DNA from: Prasinococcaceae sp. CCMP 1430 | Taxonomy: Eukaryota; Plantae; Prasinodermophyta | Assembly (NCBI GenBank): GCA_013416795.1 | Contig: RQSC01001045.1 | Location: 41,312-105,311 of the forward strand | Direction: 5' to 3' | DNA length: 64,000 nt | Shown here: piece after piece, positions 17,750 to 63,662 of the stretch | Numbering within the stretch: position 1 is the stretch's first letter | Layout: every line of letters begins with the position of its first letter | Program-made: the position numbers and the translations under genes | Notes under the pieces: generated by a model | Seen by the model: the letters and a program-made list of their open reading frames with translations, nothing else | Database searches by the model: none | Told to the model about the DNA's origin: nothing

Positions 17750-18029
17750 NNNNNNNNNNNNNNNNNNNNNNNNNNNNNNNNNNNNNNNNNNNNNNNNNNN
17801 NNNNNNNNNNNNNNNNNNNNNNNNNNNNNNNNNNNNNNNNNNNNNNNNNNNNNNNNNNNNNNNNNNNNNNNNNNNNNNNNNNNNNNNNNNNNNNNNNNNN
17901 NNNNNNNNNNNNNNNNNNNNNNNNNNNNNNNNNNNNNNNNNNNNNNNNNNNNNNNNNNNNNNNNNNNNNNNNNNNNNNNNNNNNNNNNNNNNNNNNNNNN
18001 NNNNNNNNNNNNNNNNNNNNNNNNNNNNN
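17750..18029. other. Assembly gap (280 N) covering the PBA1/PUX divergent promoter
   Basis: Run of n. Confidence 1.
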
Positions 18030-25934: not shown

Positions 25935-26258
25935 GTGTGCATACGAGCGCGCGCGCGCGCCCGCGTGTGTTTGTGCACGCGCGTGCGCACACACACATAC
26001 GCTGACGCGAGCGGCGCGCCCCTCACTCCCCCAACATACACACACACACAGGTGGCGTCACAGGCGCGCGCCGCTGAGGTGATGGCGCTGCACTACCTGG
26101 CGCTGGAGTGCGAGGCCGAGGTGCCGCTGTGCGCACAGGACGCGCAGCGGCCGCCGGGCGCGGCGCCGCCAGAGGACGAGGGCGCGCTCGCAGCGTACGG
26201 ATACGAAGGTGCGCGCGCAAACACACACACACACACACACACATTGATGGCACACACT

Positions 26259-26317
<59 letters not shown>

Positions 26318-26318
26318 N

Positions 26319-26379
<61 letters not shown>

Positions 26380-26676
26380 GCTGACTCGCGCGCCGCAACG
26401 TGCCACACCACCACCACCCTGCGCCCCTCTTCCCCTCCCGCAGACGCCATGCCGCGCGTCCGCGCCGGCGTCCTCACCGACGCCTTCGCGCCGGAGCACA
26501 GCGGCTGGCTGCTGCCCGCGGCGGGGGGCCACGCGGACGACCTCCCGGCGCTCGCGGACGGCCTCAGGGCGGAGTACGAGGAGCACCGAGGCGGCATCAG
26601 GCTGCGGAAGAAGAGGCACAGATTCCACGTCTCCGGCGAGGGTTTCTTCGACGCGGACGGCGCCATATGCGTGTGA
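25412..26676 (+). CDS. PD-(D/E)xK restriction-endonuclease-like protein, at least 4 exons (about 25412-25633, 25764-25832, 26052-26208, 26444-26676); 5' end unresolved
   Basis: Spliced product PLLYAYEY...[14 protein letters not shown]|FVALEVK...KRLAK|VASQA. All three introns are canonical GT-AG and phases are compatible (0,0,1). Confidence 0.65.
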
Positions 26677-26832
26677 TTCCGAATCGCATCCATCCAACAC
26701 TCGCGCTCCGTGTACGCGCTGGCGTGTGTGTGTGTTGTGTGTGTGTGTGTGCATGCTCTTGTGCGTGTGCCTGTGTGTGTGCCTCTGTGTGTGTGTGTGT
26801 GCCTGTGTGTGTGCCTCTGCGTATGTGTGTGC

Positions 26833-26867
<35 letters not shown>

Positions 26868-26909
26868 TGTGTGCCTCTGTCTGTGTGTATGTGTGTGTAT
26901 GTGTGTGTC

Positions 26910-27018
<109 letters not shown>

Positions 27019-27436
27019 GTGTGTGTGTGTGTGTGTACGTGTAGGTGTGTGTGTGCGCGCGTGAGCGCACACCCGCGTGCGCGTACACACATGTGCGAAC
27101 CTTCACGTCTGCGAGCTAGCAACGCACGAGCGGCGCGAGATGGTTTTTGGGTACTGTGCAACCGCTGTTTTTTTTTTCTATTTGAGGTAGGGTTAATGAT
27201 TTCGTTGTGCCATATCAAAACGAATGCGCTGAGCGCGCGCGAGCGGCGGCGCGCGCCACACCGCACGCGTGGCACTCGCCCCGCCACCACCACCACCACC
27301 GCACGCACGCACGCACGCACGCGCGCGCGCGCGCGCGGGTGTCCCGCCCTGTGGCTGCCGGCGCAGGCGGGCAGATCGGCGCCGTGCCCACCACCGCCAC
27401 CCCGCGCGCGCTCCCTCGCGCGTGCGGCGGCGCGAG

Positions 27437-29403
27437 ATGTTCAAGAAGAGCACGCAGACCAAGGAGCAGGGGCGGCATAAGCTGGGAGGATCGGACGTCA
27501 AGCGGCTGCGCGCGGACCTCGCCAAGCAGTACCCCGACCTCGCGGCGGACGATAAGGCGGCGCTCGATGCGCTTCTCCCCAAGAAGGCCGACGGTGAGCT
27601 GCTCTCTCTCTCACTCACTCTCTCTCGCACTCTTTCTCACTCTCTCCTGCGCGCGCCCGAGCTCCCCCGCCGATGATCGGCGCTCCTGCCGATCGCGCGC
27701 TGACGCTGCCGACGCCCGCGCCCGTGGCCGCAGTCACCGTGCTCAAGCTTGCCAACAAATCGTACGTGTACGTCTGCGGCTACGGCACCCCCGATGCGAC
27801 GCCGCTCTTCTTCGATCCGGACGGCCGCGGCGAGCTCTACCCGACGCTCTACGCGTGCTGGCGCTTCGCCGACGCCGACAGGCGCGGCGCCCGGCCGCTG
27901 CTGCTGCCCCCGCTGCCGACGCACTCCGAGGTGTCCCCCAAGGTGCTCGGCGGCGCCGATCTGATGTTGCCGGGGCTCAAGCTCCCGGCCGCGGGCCTCG
28001 ATGCGCTCGGAGAGTGGGACGCCGGCTCCAAGCGCGTCGTGGTCATCCCAGAGAATCCGTACGCGTTCGCCGTCGGCCGCATGGAGGTCAGCTCGGAGGA
28101 CGCCGCGGGGTCGGGGCTCAAGGGGAAAGGCATCAAGACGATGCACTACTTCGGCGACCTGCTGTGGGAGATGGGCGACAAGTCGCGGCCGCACGAGAGC
28201 TTCACCATCGAGCGCGTCTTTCCCATCGACGCGGTGGCACCAGAGGCGGAGGCGGAGGCGGAGGCGGAGGCGGATGCCGGAGCGGGGCCAGGGGCGGGGG
28301 CGGGGCCGGAGGGTGGCGGAGCGGCGGACGAGGCTCGCGGCGGGGAGGCCGCGGAGGCGGGCCCCGGCGCGTCCCAGGAGGAGGAGGCCGCGCCCGCCGC
28401 GGACCTCGATGGCCGCGACCTGTGCGAGGTGATCTTCGTGCGCGCGCTCGCCGCGCTGCCCGACGCCGACCTCCCCGTGATGGTGTCGAACTTCTGGAGC
28501 AAGTCGGTGCTGCCCATGCGCCCCGAGGGCACCACGCTGGACATCAAGCAGTCGCCCTTCAAGAAGATCTCCAAGCTGGTGTCGGCGCTGCAAAAGAAGA
28601 AGGTGCTCAAGTGCAAGCTCGTGCGCAAGGAGGAGCACATCGTGGCGGTCGACCGCGCGCACCCGGACATCGCGCGCGCGCAGGCGGGCGCCGCCACCGC
28701 CGCAGCCGCGGAGGGCGCGGGCGGCGGCGCGAGGAAGGGCGCAGGGGGCGGCGGCGCGGCCACCATCGAGGTGGAAACGCTCTTCAAGCCGACCTCCAAC
28801 CTGCGGCCCATCTTCGCCGGCAGCGCGGCCACGGGCGAGGGCCGCGACGCGATGTACTCGGCCGAGCAAGTGAGGGCCGCGCTCGGCGCTTACTGCACGC
28901 GCGAGGAGCTTTTCACGACCGAGGGTTCGGAGAGGGAGCTCAAGCTCGACCAGCAGCTGGCGTCGCAGCTGTATGGCAAGAAGGAGCCGCAGGCGGCGGG
29001 CGACACCGAGGCGGAGGACAGGCTGCTGGAGCGCCTGATGGGCAAGCTGACCGTCCACAGCCGCGTGGTGCGCACCTTCGGCGCGCAGCGCGAGGAGAGC
29101 CTCCGCAAGGGCAGGCTCGAGCCCATCCTCGTGACGGCGGAGGACCGCCACAAGGGGCGCAAGTTCACCACCAAGGTCACCGGCCTCGAGGCCTTCGGCA
29201 TCGTCCCGAACAGCCTGGCGTCGGACCTCAAGTCCAAGCTGAGCATGGGCGCCAGCGTGGGCAAGGACCTCGCCAAGTCCAAGCACGACGACAGCATGGA
29301 GGTGGCGCTGCAGGGCAACGTCATCAACGAGGTGGTGGACTTTTTGCGCAAGGAGTACGGCGTGCCCACCAAGCACATCAAAACGCAGAGCCGATGCAAA
29401 TAA
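27437..29403 (+). CDS. EIF2D: Translation initiation factor eIF2D/ligatin (PUA, SWIB-like, SUI1 domains); intron about 27594-27733
   Basis: MFKK...KLGGSDVKRLR, LYPTLYACW, SEVSPKVLGGADLMLPG, LDIKQSPFKKISKL, and SUI1 EDRHKGRKFTTKVTGLEAFGIVP..LASDLKSKL...EVALQGN. Confidence 0.93.
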
Positions 29404-29522
29404 AGACATGGTACAGTTACACGAGGCGCCCGCGCGCGTGCGTGCGTGTGTGCATGTGTGCGCGCGCGCTCGCATACACGAATGTGTGTGTGCGTTTGCG
29501 CGCGCGCGCGTGCCGGCGCGCG

Positions 29523-29773
29523 TCAGCGCCCGGTCTGTATGTCCTTCATGTCGACCAGCCAGTGCGTGCCCAGCTCGGCGGCGAACGAGTCCACCGCCGC
29601 CAGCGCCAGCATCGTCACCCACCACGCCCAGTCGTCGGGGCACGCGCCCGACACCGCGCACGTGAGCGCCCAGTGCACCACGCACAGCGTGCACGAGTAG
29701 TCCCACGCGCGCCGCGAGGAGCGGCACACGTAGATGGTGAGCAGGTTGGACAGCAGGAAGGACAACACCAGGC
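29523..29773 (-). CDS. Terminal exon of a SYS1/TMEM244-like Golgi membrane protein (5' exons absent)
   Basis: VLSFLLSNLLTIYVCRSSRRAWDYSCTLCVVHWALTCAVSGACPDDWAWWVTM follows the WD(Y/F)...H....P..W.WW pattern. CCAG acceptor at 29774-29777. Confidence 0.65.
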
Positions 29774-29883
29774 CTGGCGCCGGGGCGCGCCGCGCGCGTG
29801 CACGTGGGGCGCGCGCGCGGAGACGACTCGGCGTGTCAGCGCGCCAGCATGTGTGTGTGTGTGTGTGTGTGTGCGTGTGTGTG

Positions 29884-29949
<66 letters not shown>

Positions 29950-30077
29950 TGTGTGTGTGTGCGTGTGTGTGTGTGTGTGGCGCTGTGTGTGCGTGTGCGT
30001 ATGTGTGCGCTCGCGCGCCAACGCTCATACATGCACGCACGCTCACGCACACGCGCGTGCATACACACACACGCGCC

Positions 30078-30359
30078 GCCGCGGGGGCAAAGGGGGCCGC
30101 CGCGGCCGAGCTTGTGCCGCTGGCGACGCTGGGCGGACACTCCGGCTGGGTGACGGCGCTCGACGCCGCGGCCGTCGCCGGTGCGGACGCGGACGAGGAC
30201 GCGGACGCGGACGCGGACGTGCTCTCCGAGACGGAGGCGGAGAGGGACGTGCTGCTGGTGTCGGCCTCGCAGGACAGGACGGCGCGCGTGTGGCGCATCC
30301 GCCGCGCGGAGCAGCGCGCGGAGCACGCGGGCATGCGCGCCGACGCGGGGGCGGAGGAG
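30078..30359 (+). CDS. Isolated WD40-repeat exon (resembles an ELP2 blade)
   Basis: LATLGGHSGWVTALD...LLVSASQDRTARVWRI has the GH...WD-type spacing. GTGCGC donor at 30360. Confidence 0.65.
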
Positions 30360-30593
30360 GTGCGCCCTCGCGGCGCGCCTCGGCAGCGCGCGCGAGCGTT
30401 CGCCGGTGTATGTGCGTGTGTTTGTCGGCTGCACACACACACACGCGGACTGACACACACGCACACACACACACGCACACATTCACAAACACAAACACAC
30501 ACGAACACACACACACACGCACACACACACACACGCACGGACCACACACACACACACACACACGCACAAATTCACAAACACACACACATACAC

Positions 30594-30665
<72 letters not shown>

Positions 30666-30733
30666 GCGAACACGCACGCACACGCATACGCGTTTCTCGC
30701 GCTCCCTCGCGGTGTGTCTCCCGCACGGCGCAG

Positions 30734-30892
30734 GTGCGCGTGATCGAGGCGGCGCAGCGCGTGGCGGTCTTCGACGACGCGCTGGGCGACGCGGCGGCCG
30801 AGGCGTCGCTGCGCGCGCTGGCGGACGCCGGCGCGGCGCGCCAGCCCGCGGCGGTGTACCGCTACGAGCTCAGGCTCACGCGACGCGCTTGA
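30734..30892 (+). CDS. Terminal exon of an unidentified gene
   Basis: CGCAG acceptor at 30733; [52 protein letters not shown] with strong GC3 bias. Confidence 0.5.
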
Positions 30893-30899
30893 GGCCCGC

Positions 30900-30933
<34 letters not shown>

Positions 30934-31046
30934 GCACGCGCGCACATACATGTAATACTCGCGCGCAGGAGCGCCTGCGTGCACACGTGCACCCACACCC
31001 ACACACACACGCGCCCGCCCGCACACCCGCGAGTGCTCACGCACAG

Positions 31047-31160
31047 CTCGCCGAGACCATGGGCGACGACGAGGTGGCGGCGCTGCTGCGCGAGCACGGC
31101 GCCGCCGGCGCGCTGCAGCTGGAGGGAGGGAGCGCGCGCGCCCGCACTCGCCCCGTGTGA
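31047..31160 (+). CDS. Terminal exon of an ankyrin-repeat-like protein
   Basis: CACAG acceptor; [19 protein letters not shown] fits the second half of an ankyrin repeat (LA...G..EVA.LL.EHGA). Confidence 0.55.
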
Positions 31161-31189
31161 GCGGTGCATCGCTTTTGTGTGACTGGTGC

Positions 31190-31245
31190 GCCTCTGCGCG
31201 CTTGCGCATACGAGTCGCGTCTGTGAGATGTGTATGCTCGGGTTT

Positions 31246-31305
<60 letters not shown>

Positions 31306-31317
31306 ACACACACACGT

Positions 31318-31357
<40 letters not shown>

Positions 31358-31432
31358 ACACACACACACACACGTGCCTCCGCGCGCTTGCGCATACGAG
31401 TCGCGTCTGTGAGGTGTGTATGCTCGGGTTTG
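31190..31432. repeat. Two ~57-bp direct repeats (31190-31246 and 31376-31432, 2 mismatches) flanking a (CA)n array
   Basis: GCCTC(T/C)GCGCGCTTGCGCATACGAGTCGCGTCTGTGAG(A/G)TGTGTATGCTCGGGTTTG occurs twice. Confidence 0.9.
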
Positions 31433-52934: not shown

Positions 52935-53505
52935 NNNNNNNNNNNNNNNNNNNNNNNNNNNNNNNNNNNNNNNNNNNNNNNNNNNNNNNNNNNNNNNNNN
53001 NNNNNNNNNNNNNNNNNNNNNNNNNNNNNNNNNNNNNNNNNNNNNNNNNNNNNNNNNNNNNNNNNNNNNNNNNNNNNNNNNNNNNNNNNNNNNNNNNNNN
53101 NNNNNNNNNNNNNNNNNNNNNNNNNNNNNNNNNNNNNNNNNNNNNNNNNNNNNNNNNNNNNNNNNNNNNNNNNNNNNNNNNNNNNNNNNNNNNNNNNNNN
53201 NNNNNNNNNNNNNNNNNNNNNNNNNNNNNNNNNNNNNNNNNNNNNNNNNNNNNNNNNNNNNNNNNNNNNNNNNNNNNNNNNNNNNNNNNNNNNNNNNNNN
53301 NNNNNNNNNNNNNNNNNNNNNNNNNNNNNNNNNNNNNNNNNNNNNNNNNNNNNNNNNNNNNNNNNNNNNNNNNNNNNNNNNNNNNNNNNNNNNNNNNNNN
53401 NNNNNNNNNNNNNNNNNNNNNNNNNNNNNNNNNNNNNNNNNNNNNNNNNNNNNNNNNNNNNNNNNNNNNNNNNNNNNNNNNNNNNNNNNNNNNNNNNNNN
53501 NNNNN
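52935..53505. other. Assembly gap (about 570 N)
   Basis: Run of n. Confidence 1.
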
Positions 53506-60960: not shown

Positions 60961-61758
60961 TCAGCCTCGCCGCGTCTTGTAGACCCGATTGGAGCCAGGC
61001 GGGCCCTTTTGCTTGGCGCGCTCGAAGACCTGCTTTTGGTAGTATTCGAGCTCGTCAATACTCTCCATGATATCGGCGAGGGCGCGGTGGCCAGCAGCCT
61101 TGCGTGGCTTGCGCCGTTCAACGGAGGGCAGGAAGCGCCGCGTCACTTCCATAATAGAAGTCACGTCGACGATGCGGTAGTGGAGATGGTCCGCCAGACG
61201 GGGCATGTATCGCCGCAGGAAGTAGAGGTCGGCGTGCACGGAATTGCCTGCGAGCAGACCCACTTTTGGTGTCGGGATGTGCTCCCGGACGAAGGCGAGG
61301 ACGGCATCCTCAGCCTCCTCCATCGACACCCTCGAGTTGCGCACCTCTTCCGTGAGGCCGCTCGCGCCGTGGTGCTCCACGCACCACTCGTTCATGCCGG
61401 ACAGAACCTCTTCCGGGTGGTGGATCACGAGATCCGGCCCTTTGAGGCGCTGGCGCAGCTTGCCGTCGGTGACGACGCACGCAATTTCGAGGATGGTGTG
61501 CTTTTCCACGTCTAGGCCGGTCATCTCCAGGTCGATCCACACGAGGGGCTGGACGAGCAGATCACCAGACTGGTCGATCTCACCGTCGTCGCGGGGCGAT
61601 ACCTCCTGCGCTGCCCCCTCGGTGGGGCTCCCACCGGCACACTTGCCCTCACCCCCCCCGCCGCCCTCGCCGCAACTCGCGGGCGAGAGCGACCGCGACC
61701 GCGCGCCGTCGCCGCCTCCTGCGGCTGTGAGCGCAGCGAAGTAGTTGCCGCAAGCCAT
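60961..61758 (-). CDS. ORN: Oligoribonuclease (Orn/REXO2, DEDDh exonuclease)
   Basis: LVWIDLEMTGLD, EIACVVTD, WCVEHHGASGL, LAGNSVHAD, HYRIVDVTSI, HRALADIMESIDELEYY. Confidence 0.97.
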   Translation of the reverse strand: MACGNYFAALTAAGGGDGARSRSLSPASCGEGGGGGEGKCAGGSPTEGAAQEVSPRDDGEIDQSGDLLVQPLVWIDLEMTGLDVEKHTILEIACVVTDGKLRQRLKGPDLVIHHPEEVLSGMNEWCVEHHGASGLTEEVRNSRVSMEEAEDAVLAFVREHIPTPKVGLLAGNSVHADLYFLRRYMPRLADHLHYRIVDVTSIMEVTRRFLPSVERRKPRKAAGHRALADIMESIDELEYYQKQVFERAKQKGPPGSNRVYKTRRG

Positions 61759-61775
61759 CTTCCGCGCCGCCGCCG

Positions 61776-61922
61776 CTCGAGCACGCCGACATTGCGGTCG
61801 CGCCCGAAAGGATTCTCGCTCGCCACCGAGCCGAGCCCGTCGGTCGCGTCCGATTGCTGGGCGAGCGCCGGCGTCGCCAGCGCACAGCCGCCGAGCAGCA
61901 GGGTCCAGGCCGCGCGCTTCAC
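61776..61922 (-). pseudogene. 5' fragment of a bacterial secreted/outer-membrane protein gene
   Basis: The GTG start overlaps the EEP stop (GTGA). MKRAAWTLLLGGCALATPALA-QQSD is a Sec signal peptide with an A-x-A cleavage site. It is truncated after FGRDRNVGVLER. Confidence 0.72.
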
Positions 61923-62140
61923 CGGCGCCCCAGCGTGACGAGCACCGGCCGGTGGTCCGATCCGGTCGCCGGCAGCTTCTCGGCCGAAACCAGCCCCCAG
62001 TCGGGCCCGGCATAGAGCTGGTCGATCGGCAGCATGGGAAGGGCGCGCGGCCAGCTCGGCAGCGCGCGGGTCATGCGGGTGAGCGGCGCGAAGCCTTGGT
62101 CTTGCGCATGCATCGCAGCGGCCCAGGGGGTGAGGTTCAT
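61919..62140 (-). pseudogene. 3' fragment of a bacterial endonuclease/exonuclease/phosphatase (EEP, YafD-like) gene
   Basis: MNLTPW...TRALPSWP...LPIDQLYAG...GSDHRPVLVTL*: the (D)xN, IDxxY and SDHxP motifs of the EEP C-terminus. The N-terminal two-thirds are absent. Confidence 0.8.
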
Positions 62141-62181
62141 GAGACGCGTGAGCGCGCGTCGCCGAGTGCGGGCGCGCAGCG

Positions 62182-63662
62182 ATGGCACGGCAAGCGCCGC
62201 TCGGAGAGGCTGCGGTGCGCCTGGTGGGCGGCGTGGCGGCGGGCGCAGGCGGTGGCGGCGGCGGAGGCGTCTTGGCCATTGGCGGCACGAGCGCTGCTGC
62301 AGGCGCGGAAGAAGGCCCGAGCACGAGCGGCCTAGGCGCTCTAGATGCCGCGCTGGAAGCCGCGCGGCGCGGCGCGTGCCTGCGCCGCGGCATGAGCGAG
62401 GTGGGCAGAGACCCGGGCTCGGACTCAGACTGCTCGGGCTCAGAGGCCGACGCCGATAATGCGCGGGCCGCAGCAGCGTGCGACGCCGCGCTGCAGCGCG
62501 TCATCTTGCGTGAGCGAGACCTGCCGCCGCGTGCCACGGGACGCTGCGCTGTGGGCCCGCTCACCGACGGCGGCGGCGCGCGTTCGGTGCTGCGCGCCGC
62601 TGCGCGCGCCAACGTGCAGGGCGCCGGCGAGAACGGCGGCGCCAATGTGGAAGCTGCCGACAGCGCTGACGGCGATGAGGACTCAGCCTACGAGGAGGGT
62701 ATTGCCGCCGACATCGAGCGGCAGGTGGCGTCTGTTCGGGCAACCGAGTGAGTCCTCTACACACCATACAGCCCCGCCCCATCTCGCTCGCGCGCTCAAC
62801 GTCTCACGATGGCGCTGACCGGACGCGCCATGCAACTTTCCGTGGCCACACGCGGGTGTCACACCGCCTCGCGCCGCGCGCTGCACCCACGTCCGGACTC
62901 GCGCCCGCCGCATTACGCTCTCACGCGCTACAGCCGCTCGCTGGCCCCGCCGAGCGCGCTGGTGTACCTGAAGATGGACGTGCTCGACGCCAGCGACCAC
63001 GCGGTCGGCCCACCGCACTTCAAGGCAGAGCCCGACGCACGCTTCGCCGACGACGACGGCGCGGGAGGCACCCTCAAGCTGTTGCACGGCGCGCGGTACG
63101 CGCTGCGCCTCAAGCTCGAGCCCGATCGCCTCGAGCCCGCGGGCAGCGGTGTCGAGGTGTGGGCAGAGGACGAGCTTGTGTGTGCGCTGCCACTGGTGCG
63201 AGGAAGGTGCGTGGCTAATGGCTGACCGCCGTGGCAGCGCCGCGACTGTCGCAGCGCACGCGCTTTGGCGCGCGTGCCGATGCGAGGCGCTGACAGGGGC
63301 CGATATGATGGCGCGACGCTCGTTTCAGGGCCAGCAATGACGGTGCAGGCTGGTGGGAGAGCGACGGCGCCTGGGTTTGCGCGCTGCTGCCGAGCGAGCA
63401 GGGCGCACGCGTACGGTTGCAGGTGCGCTGCGCTCTGACGCCGGCCTTCGGCGAGGCGGCGCTTCCGCTGCTCGCCAAGGTGTACGCTCCGGCGCACCCC
63501 CCCGTGGAGCGTGGGGGGCGCGCTGGCACGGAAAGCGCGCGCGCGCCCGGGCGCAGGGGGGCGCCGCTCGAGGCGGTGGCGGCACGCCTCACGCGAGCGG
63601 AGACTGCCGACCCCAGCGGCGAGGCTGGTGTCCAATGGTGCCATCTCATCGGCGCGACGTGA
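62182..63662 (+). CDS. Protein with a C-terminal CB1 cannabinoid receptor-interacting protein (CNRIP1/CRIP1a)-like domain; introns 62748-62933 and 63207-63328
   Basis: GTGAGT and GTGCGT donors, TACAG and TTCAG acceptors, both phase 2 and frame-restoring. Product: VYLKMDVLDA...GPPHFKAEPDARF...TLKLLHGARYALRLKLEP...LLPSEQGARVRLQV...LLAKVY...GAPLEAV. Confidence 0.72.

What the first reader, a model, noticed from the sequence alone, without database searches (positions are those of the whole stretch)
61776..62140. A ~365-bp piece of bacterial operon DNA occupies the ORN / CNRIP1-like divergent promoter region
The segment holds the 3' end of an EEP-family gene whose TGA overlaps the GTG start (GTGA, bacterial translational coupling) of a gene with a Sec signal peptide, truncated after about 48 codons. 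Both genes break off abruptly at the boundaries. The signal peptide and FGRDRNV motif recall alphaproteobacterial (sphingomonad-like) outer-membrane proteins of exopolysaccharide loci; this is inference from memory. The fragment fills about 365 of the 423 bp between two divergent start codons. It is either a very recent bacterium-to-alga DNA insertion now acting as or disrupting a bidirectional promoter, or a gap closed with reads from a co-cultured bacterium.
Basis: partly seen in the sequence, partly recalled or inferred. Interest (0 to 1): 0.75.

Follow-up and report, generated by a model that had tools for sequence, protein, structure and literature searches.

The report
Sphingomonad DNA scrap between two algal genes
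A 376-base piece of almost unchanged soil/water-type bacterial (sphingomonad) DNA sits between two back-to-back genes in the Prasinoderma coloniale reference assembly where wild relatives have algal sequence; it is more likely an assembly or sample fault than a true bacterium-to-alga transfer, and only the raw reads can settle this.

Summary
Window 61766-62141 is 97% identical in DNA to a Sphingomonas/Sphingopyxis chromosome. The best match is 'S. kyeonggiensis' S00224. The piece holds the last 73 codons of an EEP-family gene. Its TGA stop overlaps the GTG start of a beta-barrel porin gene (PF10082), which is cut off after 52 codons.

The piece is pristine. It differs from S00224 at 11 sites (8 synonymous, 3 not), and only one base is private to the window among 16 sphingomonads.

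It fills the 423-bp spacer between oligoribonuclease and PRCOL_00004117. Near-identical wild Prasinoderma contigs read ordinary Ala/Arg-rich algal sequence on both sides. At least 102 native bases are therefore missing from the window.

The left junction lies in a 20-nt GC-rich zone shared by alga and bacterium. The right junction is blunt.

Two other divergent-promoter spacers in this window hold N runs of 280 and 571 bases, and there are three single Ns.

The scan found this kind of thing before on other DNA of this genome: earlier unchecked notes list about ten bacterial, organellar and rDNA scraps at gene 5' ends.

My reading is an assembly or contaminant artefact (about 0.6) against a real strain-private capture of foreign DNA during break repair (about 0.35).

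The parts
61766..62141 (-). Block of sphingomonad chromosomal DNA (376 bp), 97% identical to Sphingomonas kyeonggiensis S00224 (NZ_JACHLN010000003.1)
   Evidence: BLASTN 96.85% over 381 bp, bit score 630. Alignment. Only 1 base (62035) is private to the window among 16 sphingomonads. It is the top sphingomonad-like 300-bp window of the 64 kb in a Markov log-likelihood scan, z=2.6.
61919..62141 (-). 3' end of an endonuclease/exonuclease/phosphatase (EEP) family gene: last 73 codons plus the TGA stop (61921-61919)
   Evidence: Translation. PF03372 matches the C-terminal part of the profile (184-225 of 225), E=0.0066. 96% protein identity to L001:3305-4222, which is PF03372 at E=8e-23.
61766..61922 (-). 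5' end of a beta-barrel porin gene (PF10082 BBP2_2; weak TIGR03016/EpsL): GTG start overlapping the EEP stop (GTGA), signal peptide, 52 codons, then cut off
   Evidence: Translation. Identical to the first 52 residues of L001:4219-5517 except ATG/GTG at the start. The full-length donor protein matches PF10082 at E=2.5e-76 and TIGR03016 at E=2e-12, below cut-off.
61766..61785 (.). Left junction zone: 20 nt that are 100% bacterial and also encode, in the ORN frame, the same residues (RARAAAA) as the upstream ORF of wild Prasinoderma ORN genes. This is GC-rich (GCG)n similarity shared by donor and target.
   Evidence: Alignment of the window's upstream frame with P0002-P0004. The bacterial alignment ends at 61766.
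62141..62142 (.). Right junction: blunt (0-2 nt shared). Native algal sequence resumes at 62142/62143.
   Evidence: The wild ORFs P0010, P0015 and P0019 read ...AAARDG-DARARVAECGRAA-M. The window reads ...GS*-DA*ARVAECGRAA-M. The bacterial match stops at 62141.
60964..61758 (-). Oligoribonuclease (ORN) gene, 265 aa; its ATG lies 8 nt from the end of the bacterial block
   Evidence: PF00929 E=1e-31. NF003765 oligoribonuclease, 229 bits against a cut-off of 106. The exact protein is in EukProt.
62182..62748 (+). First exon ORF of PRCOL_00004117 (390-aa annotated protein, no known domain); its ATG lies 40 nt from the block
   Evidence: Cluster look-up names EP00793_Prasinoderma_coloniale_P005643 / PRCOL_00004117-RA. 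Alignment. No Pfam family.

Best explanation
The 376-bp block is contaminant-derived sequence that entered the reference assembly at a hard-to-assemble, very GC-rich divergent-promoter spacer. In this reading it is not part of the alga's chromosome and does nothing.

Shown: the DNA is genuine, essentially unmutated Sphingomonas/Sphingopyxis chromosomal DNA. It takes the place of native spacer sequence that wild relatives have. One junction sits in a 20-nt (GCG)n stretch shared by donor and target. The same window has unresolved N runs in two other spacers of the same kind.

Inferred: the native spacer was not resolved by the algal reads. A patching, gap-closing or consensus step then extended from the ORN side through the shared GC-rich stretch into reads of a bacterium present in the culture or the libraries. 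The patch was then butt-joined to the other flank.
For: (1) The donor is a sphingomonad whose nearest relatives in 185,579 species genomes are soil, root, cave and groundwater Sphingopyxis/Sphingomonas. Sphingomonas and Sphingopyxis are listed among water- and soil-type reagent and laboratory contaminant genera (PMC4228153).

(2) The block is pristine. It has 8 synonymous and 3 non-synonymous differences from S00224. Ten of the 11 are shared with other sphingomonads, and only 1 base of 376 is private. It therefore shows no decay since it left a living bacterium.

(3) Both genes are truncated and the piece has no coding use in the alga.

(4) Wild Prasinoderma contigs are 97-100% identical in ORN and 94-98% in PRCOL_00004117. 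Gene-length matching (14,934 and 18,269 bp) places both genes on at least two of the same contigs. These contigs read algal Ala/Arg/Gly-rich sequence, not the bacterial block, for 102 nt (ORN side) and 141 nt (other side) upstream of the start codons. At least 102 native bases are missing from the window.

(5) The window holds N runs of 280 and 571 bases. Both lie in spacers between divergently oriented genes, the same kind of site. There are also three single Ns. The published methods mention no gaps, so the assembly was treated in ways that are not described.

(6) The authors themselves screened for 'putative bacterial contamination'.

(7) Earlier scan notes on this genome are unchecked leads. 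They list about ten more short bacterial, mitochondrial, plastid and rDNA pieces at gene 5' ends, several of which remove start codons. That density and those targets are hard to reconcile with a viable genome and easy to reconcile with a systematic assembly fault.
Against: The published pipeline is NextDenovo on PacBio reads, then Arrow, then NextPolish. None of these steps, as I know them, can paste 376 foreign bases between two adjacent algal flanks. If the contig really is a long-read consensus, the reads must contain the piece.

The culture was reported axenic, so bacterial reads should be rare.

The right junction is blunt and has no N, which a k-mer-overlap gap closer would not normally produce.

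The size (376 bp) and the junction types also fit real end-joining capture of 'junk' DNA as seen in Chlamydomonas (10.1101/464859).

The wild contigs are other genotypes, so absence from them does not show absence from CCMP1413.
Confidence: 0.6

Rival explanations
1. The insertion is real and private to the strain. A double-strand break in the nucleosome-poor, GC-rich spacer between ORN and PRCOL_00004117 was repaired by end joining. The repair captured a roughly 360-376-bp scrap of DNA from a sphingomonad living in the xenic CCMP1413 culture before it was made axenic. At least 102 native bases were lost. One end joined through (GCG)n microhomology and the other end joined blunt. The scrap is non-coding filler that now makes up most of the shared promoter and 5' region of both genes, and it may cut off an upstream Arg/Ala-rich extension of ORN.
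For: The contig is said to come from long reads only. Both flanks are adjacent algal genes that are also neighbours on wild contigs. The size is in the range of the 'junk fragments' captured at end-joining sites in Chlamydomonas, which are mostly under 300-500 bp and up to 1 kb (10.1101/464859). The junction pattern, microhomology on one side and blunt on the other, is typical of end joining. At this alga's mutation rate of 2e-10 per site per generation (PMC11884799), a 376-bp insert would stay unmutated for millions of generations, so its pristine state does not argue against integration. Earlier notes report small target deletions (21 and 50 bases) at similar pieces elsewhere in this genome (unchecked).
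Against: A walled coccoid alga has no known route for taking up bacterial DNA. The nearest donor relatives are non-marine. Many such pieces in one genome, some removing start codons, would be costly. N runs at sister sites point to assembly trouble. Replacing the core promoter of two genes, one of them the conserved ORN, should be deleterious. No independent assembly with the same junction was found, although the look-ups were weak tests.
Confidence: 0.35
2. This is an older natural horizontal transfer that has been co-opted, with the bacterial piece kept by selection as promoter or 5'UTR sequence of one or both genes.
For: It occupies the whole region where a bidirectional promoter should be.
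Against: It is absent from all wild Prasinoderma genotypes sampled, on both sides. It shows no sign of adaptation or decay, with 1 private base in 376. The genes in it are truncated at arbitrary points. No expression data could be examined here.
Confidence: 0.03
3. These are chance open reading frames in GC-rich algal DNA that only look bacterial.
For: Long ORFs in all six frames are common in this 70-75% GC region.
Against: 97% nucleotide identity over 376-381 bp to a bacterial chromosome with conserved gene order, and 79-84% identity to 15 further species.
Confidence: 0

Closest known systems
Contaminant-derived or mis-filled sequence in genome assemblies (gap closers often close gaps with sequence that does not represent the true sequence; 10.1101/2021.02.26.432990)
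   Same: A short block of foreign, pristine DNA at a GC-rich, hard-to-assemble site. The donor genus is known as a laboratory and reagent contaminant (PMC4228153). Native sequence is missing at the same place. There are N runs at sister sites in the same window.
   Different: The published pipeline describes no gap closing. Both flanks are correctly adjacent. The right junction is blunt and carries no N.
'Junk fragment' / filler DNA capture during non-homologous end joining in green algae (Chlamydomonas insertional mutants; 10.1101/464859)
   Same: The size class (hundreds of bp), the random non-functional content, a target-site deletion, and a mix of microhomology and blunt junctions.
   Different: In Chlamydomonas the fragments come from the alga's own lysed cells and enter during electroporation together with a cassette. 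Here the donor would be a bacterium and the event spontaneous. Neither has been shown.
Young NUMT/NUPT-type insertions (organelle DNA captured at nuclear breaks)
   Same: The same proposed mechanism, and the same pristine, non-functional, strain-private state. Earlier notes report organellar pieces at other gene starts of this genome (s1-405982, s1-396461; unchecked).
   Different: The donor is an extracellular bacterium, not an organelle inside the cell.
Functional bacterium-to-alga horizontal gene transfer
   Same: Bacterial DNA flanked by algal genes on one contig.
   Different: There is no complete gene, no introns or algal codon adaptation, and no presence in relatives. It does not qualify as gene transfer.

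Membership tests
EEP (endonuclease/exonuclease/phosphatase, PF03372) gene fragment of sphingomonad origin | Sequence match to the family profile and to a full-length member | tested here: met
   The fragment matches PF03372 at E=0.0066 on the C-terminal end of the profile. It is 96% identical to the S00224 305-aa protein, which scores E=8e-23.
EEP (endonuclease/exonuclease/phosphatase, PF03372) gene fragment of sphingomonad origin | Complete catalytic domain present | tested here: not met
   Only the last 73 of 305 codons are present.
BBP2_2 beta-barrel porin (PF10082) of polysaccharide loci | Match to a full-length family member; barrel domain present | tested here: not met
   The first 52 residues (signal peptide and N-terminus) are identical to the S00224 protein, which is PF10082 at E=2.5e-76. 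The barrel (residues 52-429) is absent from the window. The fragment alone gives no Pfam hit.
Functional horizontal gene transfer into a eukaryote | Intact transferred ORF | tested here: not met
   Both genes are truncated at the block's ends.
Functional horizontal gene transfer into a eukaryote | Presence in related lineages or signs of residence (amelioration, decay) | tested here: not met
   It is absent on both sides in wild Prasinoderma ORFs. There is 1 private base in 376.
End-joining capture of filler DNA (real insertion) | Short foreign fragment with target deletion and short or no junction homology | tested here: inconclusive
   The block is 376 bp. At least 102 native nt are missing. 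The left junction zone shares 20 nt and the right junction 0-2 nt. The native spacer length is unresolved.
End-joining capture of filler DNA (real insertion) | Single DNA molecules of the host span both junctions at host depth | not testable with these tools
Exact look-ups of junction-spanning ORFs found nothing.
Assembly / contaminant artefact | Donor is a plausible contaminant and the sequence is indistinguishable from a live bacterial allele | tested here: met
   PMC4228153.
Assembly / contaminant artefact | Independent signs of local assembly failure at the same kind of site | tested here: met
   N runs of 280 and 571 bases lie in two other divergent-gene spacers, and there are three single Ns in the same 64 kb.
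Assembly / contaminant artefact | Depth drop or absence of host reads across the junctions | not testable with these tools

The most novel reading that the evidence does not exclude
The P. coloniale CCMP1413 nucleus really carries this and a series of other pristine scraps of bacterial (at least partly sphingomonad), organellar and rDNA sequence. They would have been captured at breaks in GC-rich promoter regions. This would be a directly observable first step of bacterium-to-alga DNA transfer, in which foreign DNA arrives as random, non-functional filler at gene 5' ends and rewires or beheads genes in one cultured lineage.
Probability: 0.33. Interest if true: 0.7.

Novelty: not a real feature. 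Interest (0 to 1): 0.3.

Why it matters
If it is an artefact, the reference genome of the only sequenced member of a whole green-plant phylum contains contaminant patches and N runs exactly at promoters and gene starts. That would corrupt 5' gene models, promoter analyses, HGT screens and mutation-rate 'callable genome' estimates. The patches can be listed by aligning the assembly to the S00224-like genome.

If it is real, it would be a rare caught-in-the-act example of bacterial DNA captured by a eukaryotic nucleus, with promoters as the landing sites. Either way the piece is not a transferred gene and should not be counted as HGT.

Tried and rejected
- BLASTN of the block against 72,556 plasmids found no match, so the donor is chromosomal.
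- The metagenome-contig scan with the wild ORN protein returned only distant ORNs (57% identity or less) and no Prasinoderma DNA. Wild DNA across the spacer could therefore not be read.
Wild contigs could be examined only through their called proteins.
- Exact look-ups of ORFs that cross the junctions (350-aa and 141-aa ORFs) found nothing. This is uninformative, because gene callers would rarely call them.
- I tried to rebuild the native spacer by overlapping the wild upstream ORFs from the two sides. I also aligned them to the opposite flank with a frameshift-tolerant aligner. No alignment scored above shuffled controls, so the native length stays unknown.
- My own by-eye match of 'AALA/RxAPA' motifs in the right flank was rejected on that basis.
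- The Rfam scan of the window found no rRNA or tRNA pieces.
- A self-comparison found no second copy of the block.
- In the Markov scan, no other segment exceeded z=2. The next-best segments (15.5 kb, 59.7-60.1 kb) are native genes or spacers.
- The file has no lower-case 'no evidence' marking.
- The idea that the single Ns are the signature of a particular short-read gap closer rests on my memory only; the paper I checked did not document it.

Full report
**What is there.** The window is very GC-rich (70-75% around the finding). Earlier scan notes name the genome as Prasinoderma coloniale. I confirmed this: the right-hand neighbour gene is EukProt EP00793_Prasinoderma_coloniale PRCOL_00004117, and the ORN protein is an exact EukProt entry.

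Read on the minus strand, 62141-61922 encodes the last 73 residues of an endonuclease/exonuclease/phosphatase protein. Its TGA stop overlaps a GTG start (GTGA). That start opens an ORF with a Sec-type signal peptide and the FGRDRNV motif.

A scan of one genome per bacterial species found 16 Sphingomonas/Sphingopyxis loci with the same two genes in the same order. The best, 'Sphingomonas kyeonggiensis' S00224, is 96.85% identical in DNA over 381 bp. The others are 79-84% identical.

In S00224 the locus reads GT2 glycosyltransferase, then EEP (305 aa, PF03372 E=8e-23), then a 432-aa beta-barrel porin (PF10082 E=2.5e-76, with weak PEP-CTERM/EpsL-type matches). The EEP stop and the porin start overlap.

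**Exact limits and state.** Column by column, the window follows the bacteria from 62141 down to 61766 and departs from all of them at 61765. The block is therefore 376 bp.
- It differs from S00224 at 11 sites.
- Three of these change an amino acid and eight are synonymous. One of the eight turns the porin's ATG start into GTG, which is also the start in three other sphingomonads.
- At ten of the 11 sites the window's base also occurs in other sphingomonads. Only 62035 is private.

This is the pattern of a live sister-strain allele under purifying selection, not of a decaying insert. At this alga's mutation rate (2e-10 per site per generation, PMC11884799), a 376-bp insert would stay clean for millions of generations. 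The pristine state therefore does not by itself separate a real insert from an artefact.

**Setting.** The block lies in the 423-bp spacer between two divergent genes.
- Oligoribonuclease has its ATG at 61758 on the minus strand (NF003765, 229 bits).
- PRCOL_00004117 has its ATG at 62182 on the plus strand.
- I found no support for calling the latter CNRIP1-like.

**Comparison with wild relatives.** The ORN protein belongs to a cluster with eight members from ENA/Logan metagenome assemblies that are 97-100% identical over the shared part. The exon-1 ORF of PRCOL_00004117 has 14 such relatives. Matching contig lengths (14,934 and 18,269 bp) indicate that the two genes are neighbours in the wild too.

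Three wild ORN calls run 34 codons further upstream. They agree with the window for only nine codons before the ATG (RARAAAARK) and then read Ala/Arg-rich algal sequence instead of the bacterial block.

Three wild calls of the other gene run 47 codons upstream. They agree with the window up to 62142/62143 (DA-ARVAECGRAA-M) and then also read algal sequence.

So the block is absent from every wild genotype sampled, on both sides. The window lacks at least 102 native bases. I could not overlap the two wild extensions with each other or with the opposite flank above shuffled controls, so the native spacer length is unknown.

**Junctions.**
- On the left, 61766-61785 is 100% bacterial and also encodes the same residues as the wild algal sequence. 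The join therefore lies inside a roughly 20-nt (GCG)n-type similarity between donor and target.
- On the right, the join is blunt (0-2 nt).

**Signs of assembly trouble.** The window contains 854 Ns: single Ns at 688, 26318 (inside an AC repeat) and 32269, and runs of 280 (17750-18029) and 571 (52935-53505). Both long runs lie in spacers between divergently oriented genes. The first runs from 57 nt upstream of a proteasome subunit's start codon into the 5' end of a PUB/UBX-like gene. The second lies between an unnamed gene and a DMT-type transporter gene.

Three divergent-promoter spacers in 64 kb are therefore abnormal. The published methods (PacBio, NextDenovo, Arrow, NextPolish, screening of contigs against nr) mention neither gaps nor masking.

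**Earlier notes on this genome.** These are unchecked, and I could not see those windows. They describe:
- a 332-bp Sphingomonas piece that replaces 21 bases upstream of cyclin C and is missing from five wild copies (s1-399960);
- further bacterial pieces of 77-726 bp at gene 5' ends (s1-400074, s1-400020, s1-389887, s1-393066, s1-389907, s1-396519, s1-403904);
- mitochondrial and plastid pieces at start codons (s1-405982, s1-396461);
- an rDNA piece in a patchwork seen only in this assembly (s1-409070);
- a patchwork gene start in this very window (s1-409060).

The scan has therefore met this phenomenon before on other DNA of the same genome.

**Weighing the two readings.**

For an artefact:
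- The donor's nearest relatives are non-marine, and the genera are classic laboratory and reagent contaminants (PMC4228153).
- The block replaces native sequence at a site class that elsewhere in the window is unresolved.
- One junction sits in a shared low-complexity stretch, of the sort that misleads overlap-based software.
- The many similar pieces, some of which behead genes, are hard to square with a viable genome.

For a real insertion:
- The described pipeline has no step that could paste 376 foreign bases between two correctly adjacent flanks.
- The culture was reported axenic.
- The size and junction types match end-joining capture of 'junk' DNA, which is documented in Chlamydomonas (10.1101/464859).

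I put the artefact at about 0.6 and a real, strain-private capture at about 0.35. A selected or co-opted transfer is very unlikely, and chance is excluded. In no reading is this a transferred gene.

**What I could not do.** The metagenome scan returned no Prasinoderma DNA. The decisive test is read mapping or PCR across 61766 and 62141, using the original reads or the independent CCMP1413 Illumina and Nanopore data of PMC11884799.

Noticed in passing
window 17750-18029 and 52935-53505: N runs of 280 and 571 bases. Each lies in the spacer between two divergently oriented genes: proteasome beta subunit / PUB-UBX-like gene, and an unnamed gene / DMT-type transporter. The start codon of the PUB-UBX-like gene seems to be lost in the first run. 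The published assembly methods mention no gaps.
   Followed up: partly
window 688, 26318, 32269: Single N characters. One is inside an (AC)n run.
   Followed up: partly
window 61756-61750 (ORN codon 3) and ORN codon 106: ORN codon 3 is Cys in the reference and in one wild contig, but Ala or Trp in the other wild genotypes, in a protein that is otherwise 97-100% conserved. Lys106 of the reference is Glu in all eight wild sequences, so it is either a private change or a reference error.
   Followed up: no
wild proteins P0002-P0004 (upstream of the ORN start, equivalent to window 61759 and beyond): Three wild gene calls extend ORN by 34 Ala/Arg-rich residues that look like an organelle-targeting presequence. 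If that start is real, the reference gene model, which begins right after the bacterial block, lacks it.
   Followed up: no
window 62149-62151: In the native right flank the reference has TGA where the wild upstream ORFs read Arg. This is a single-base difference that closes the upstream frame of PRCOL_00004117 in the reference.
   Followed up: no
window 26200-31400: A family of 130-270-bp direct and inverted repeats (76-93% identical) is scattered over about 5 kb. It includes the (AC)n tract with the single N.
   Followed up: no
L001 (NZ_JACHLN010000003.1) versus L011 (type strain DSM 101806): The two genomes named Sphingomonas kyeonggiensis are only about 84% identical at this locus. Most other close hits are named Sphingopyxis. 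Strain S00224 is therefore probably misnamed at species level, and perhaps at genus level.
   Followed up: no
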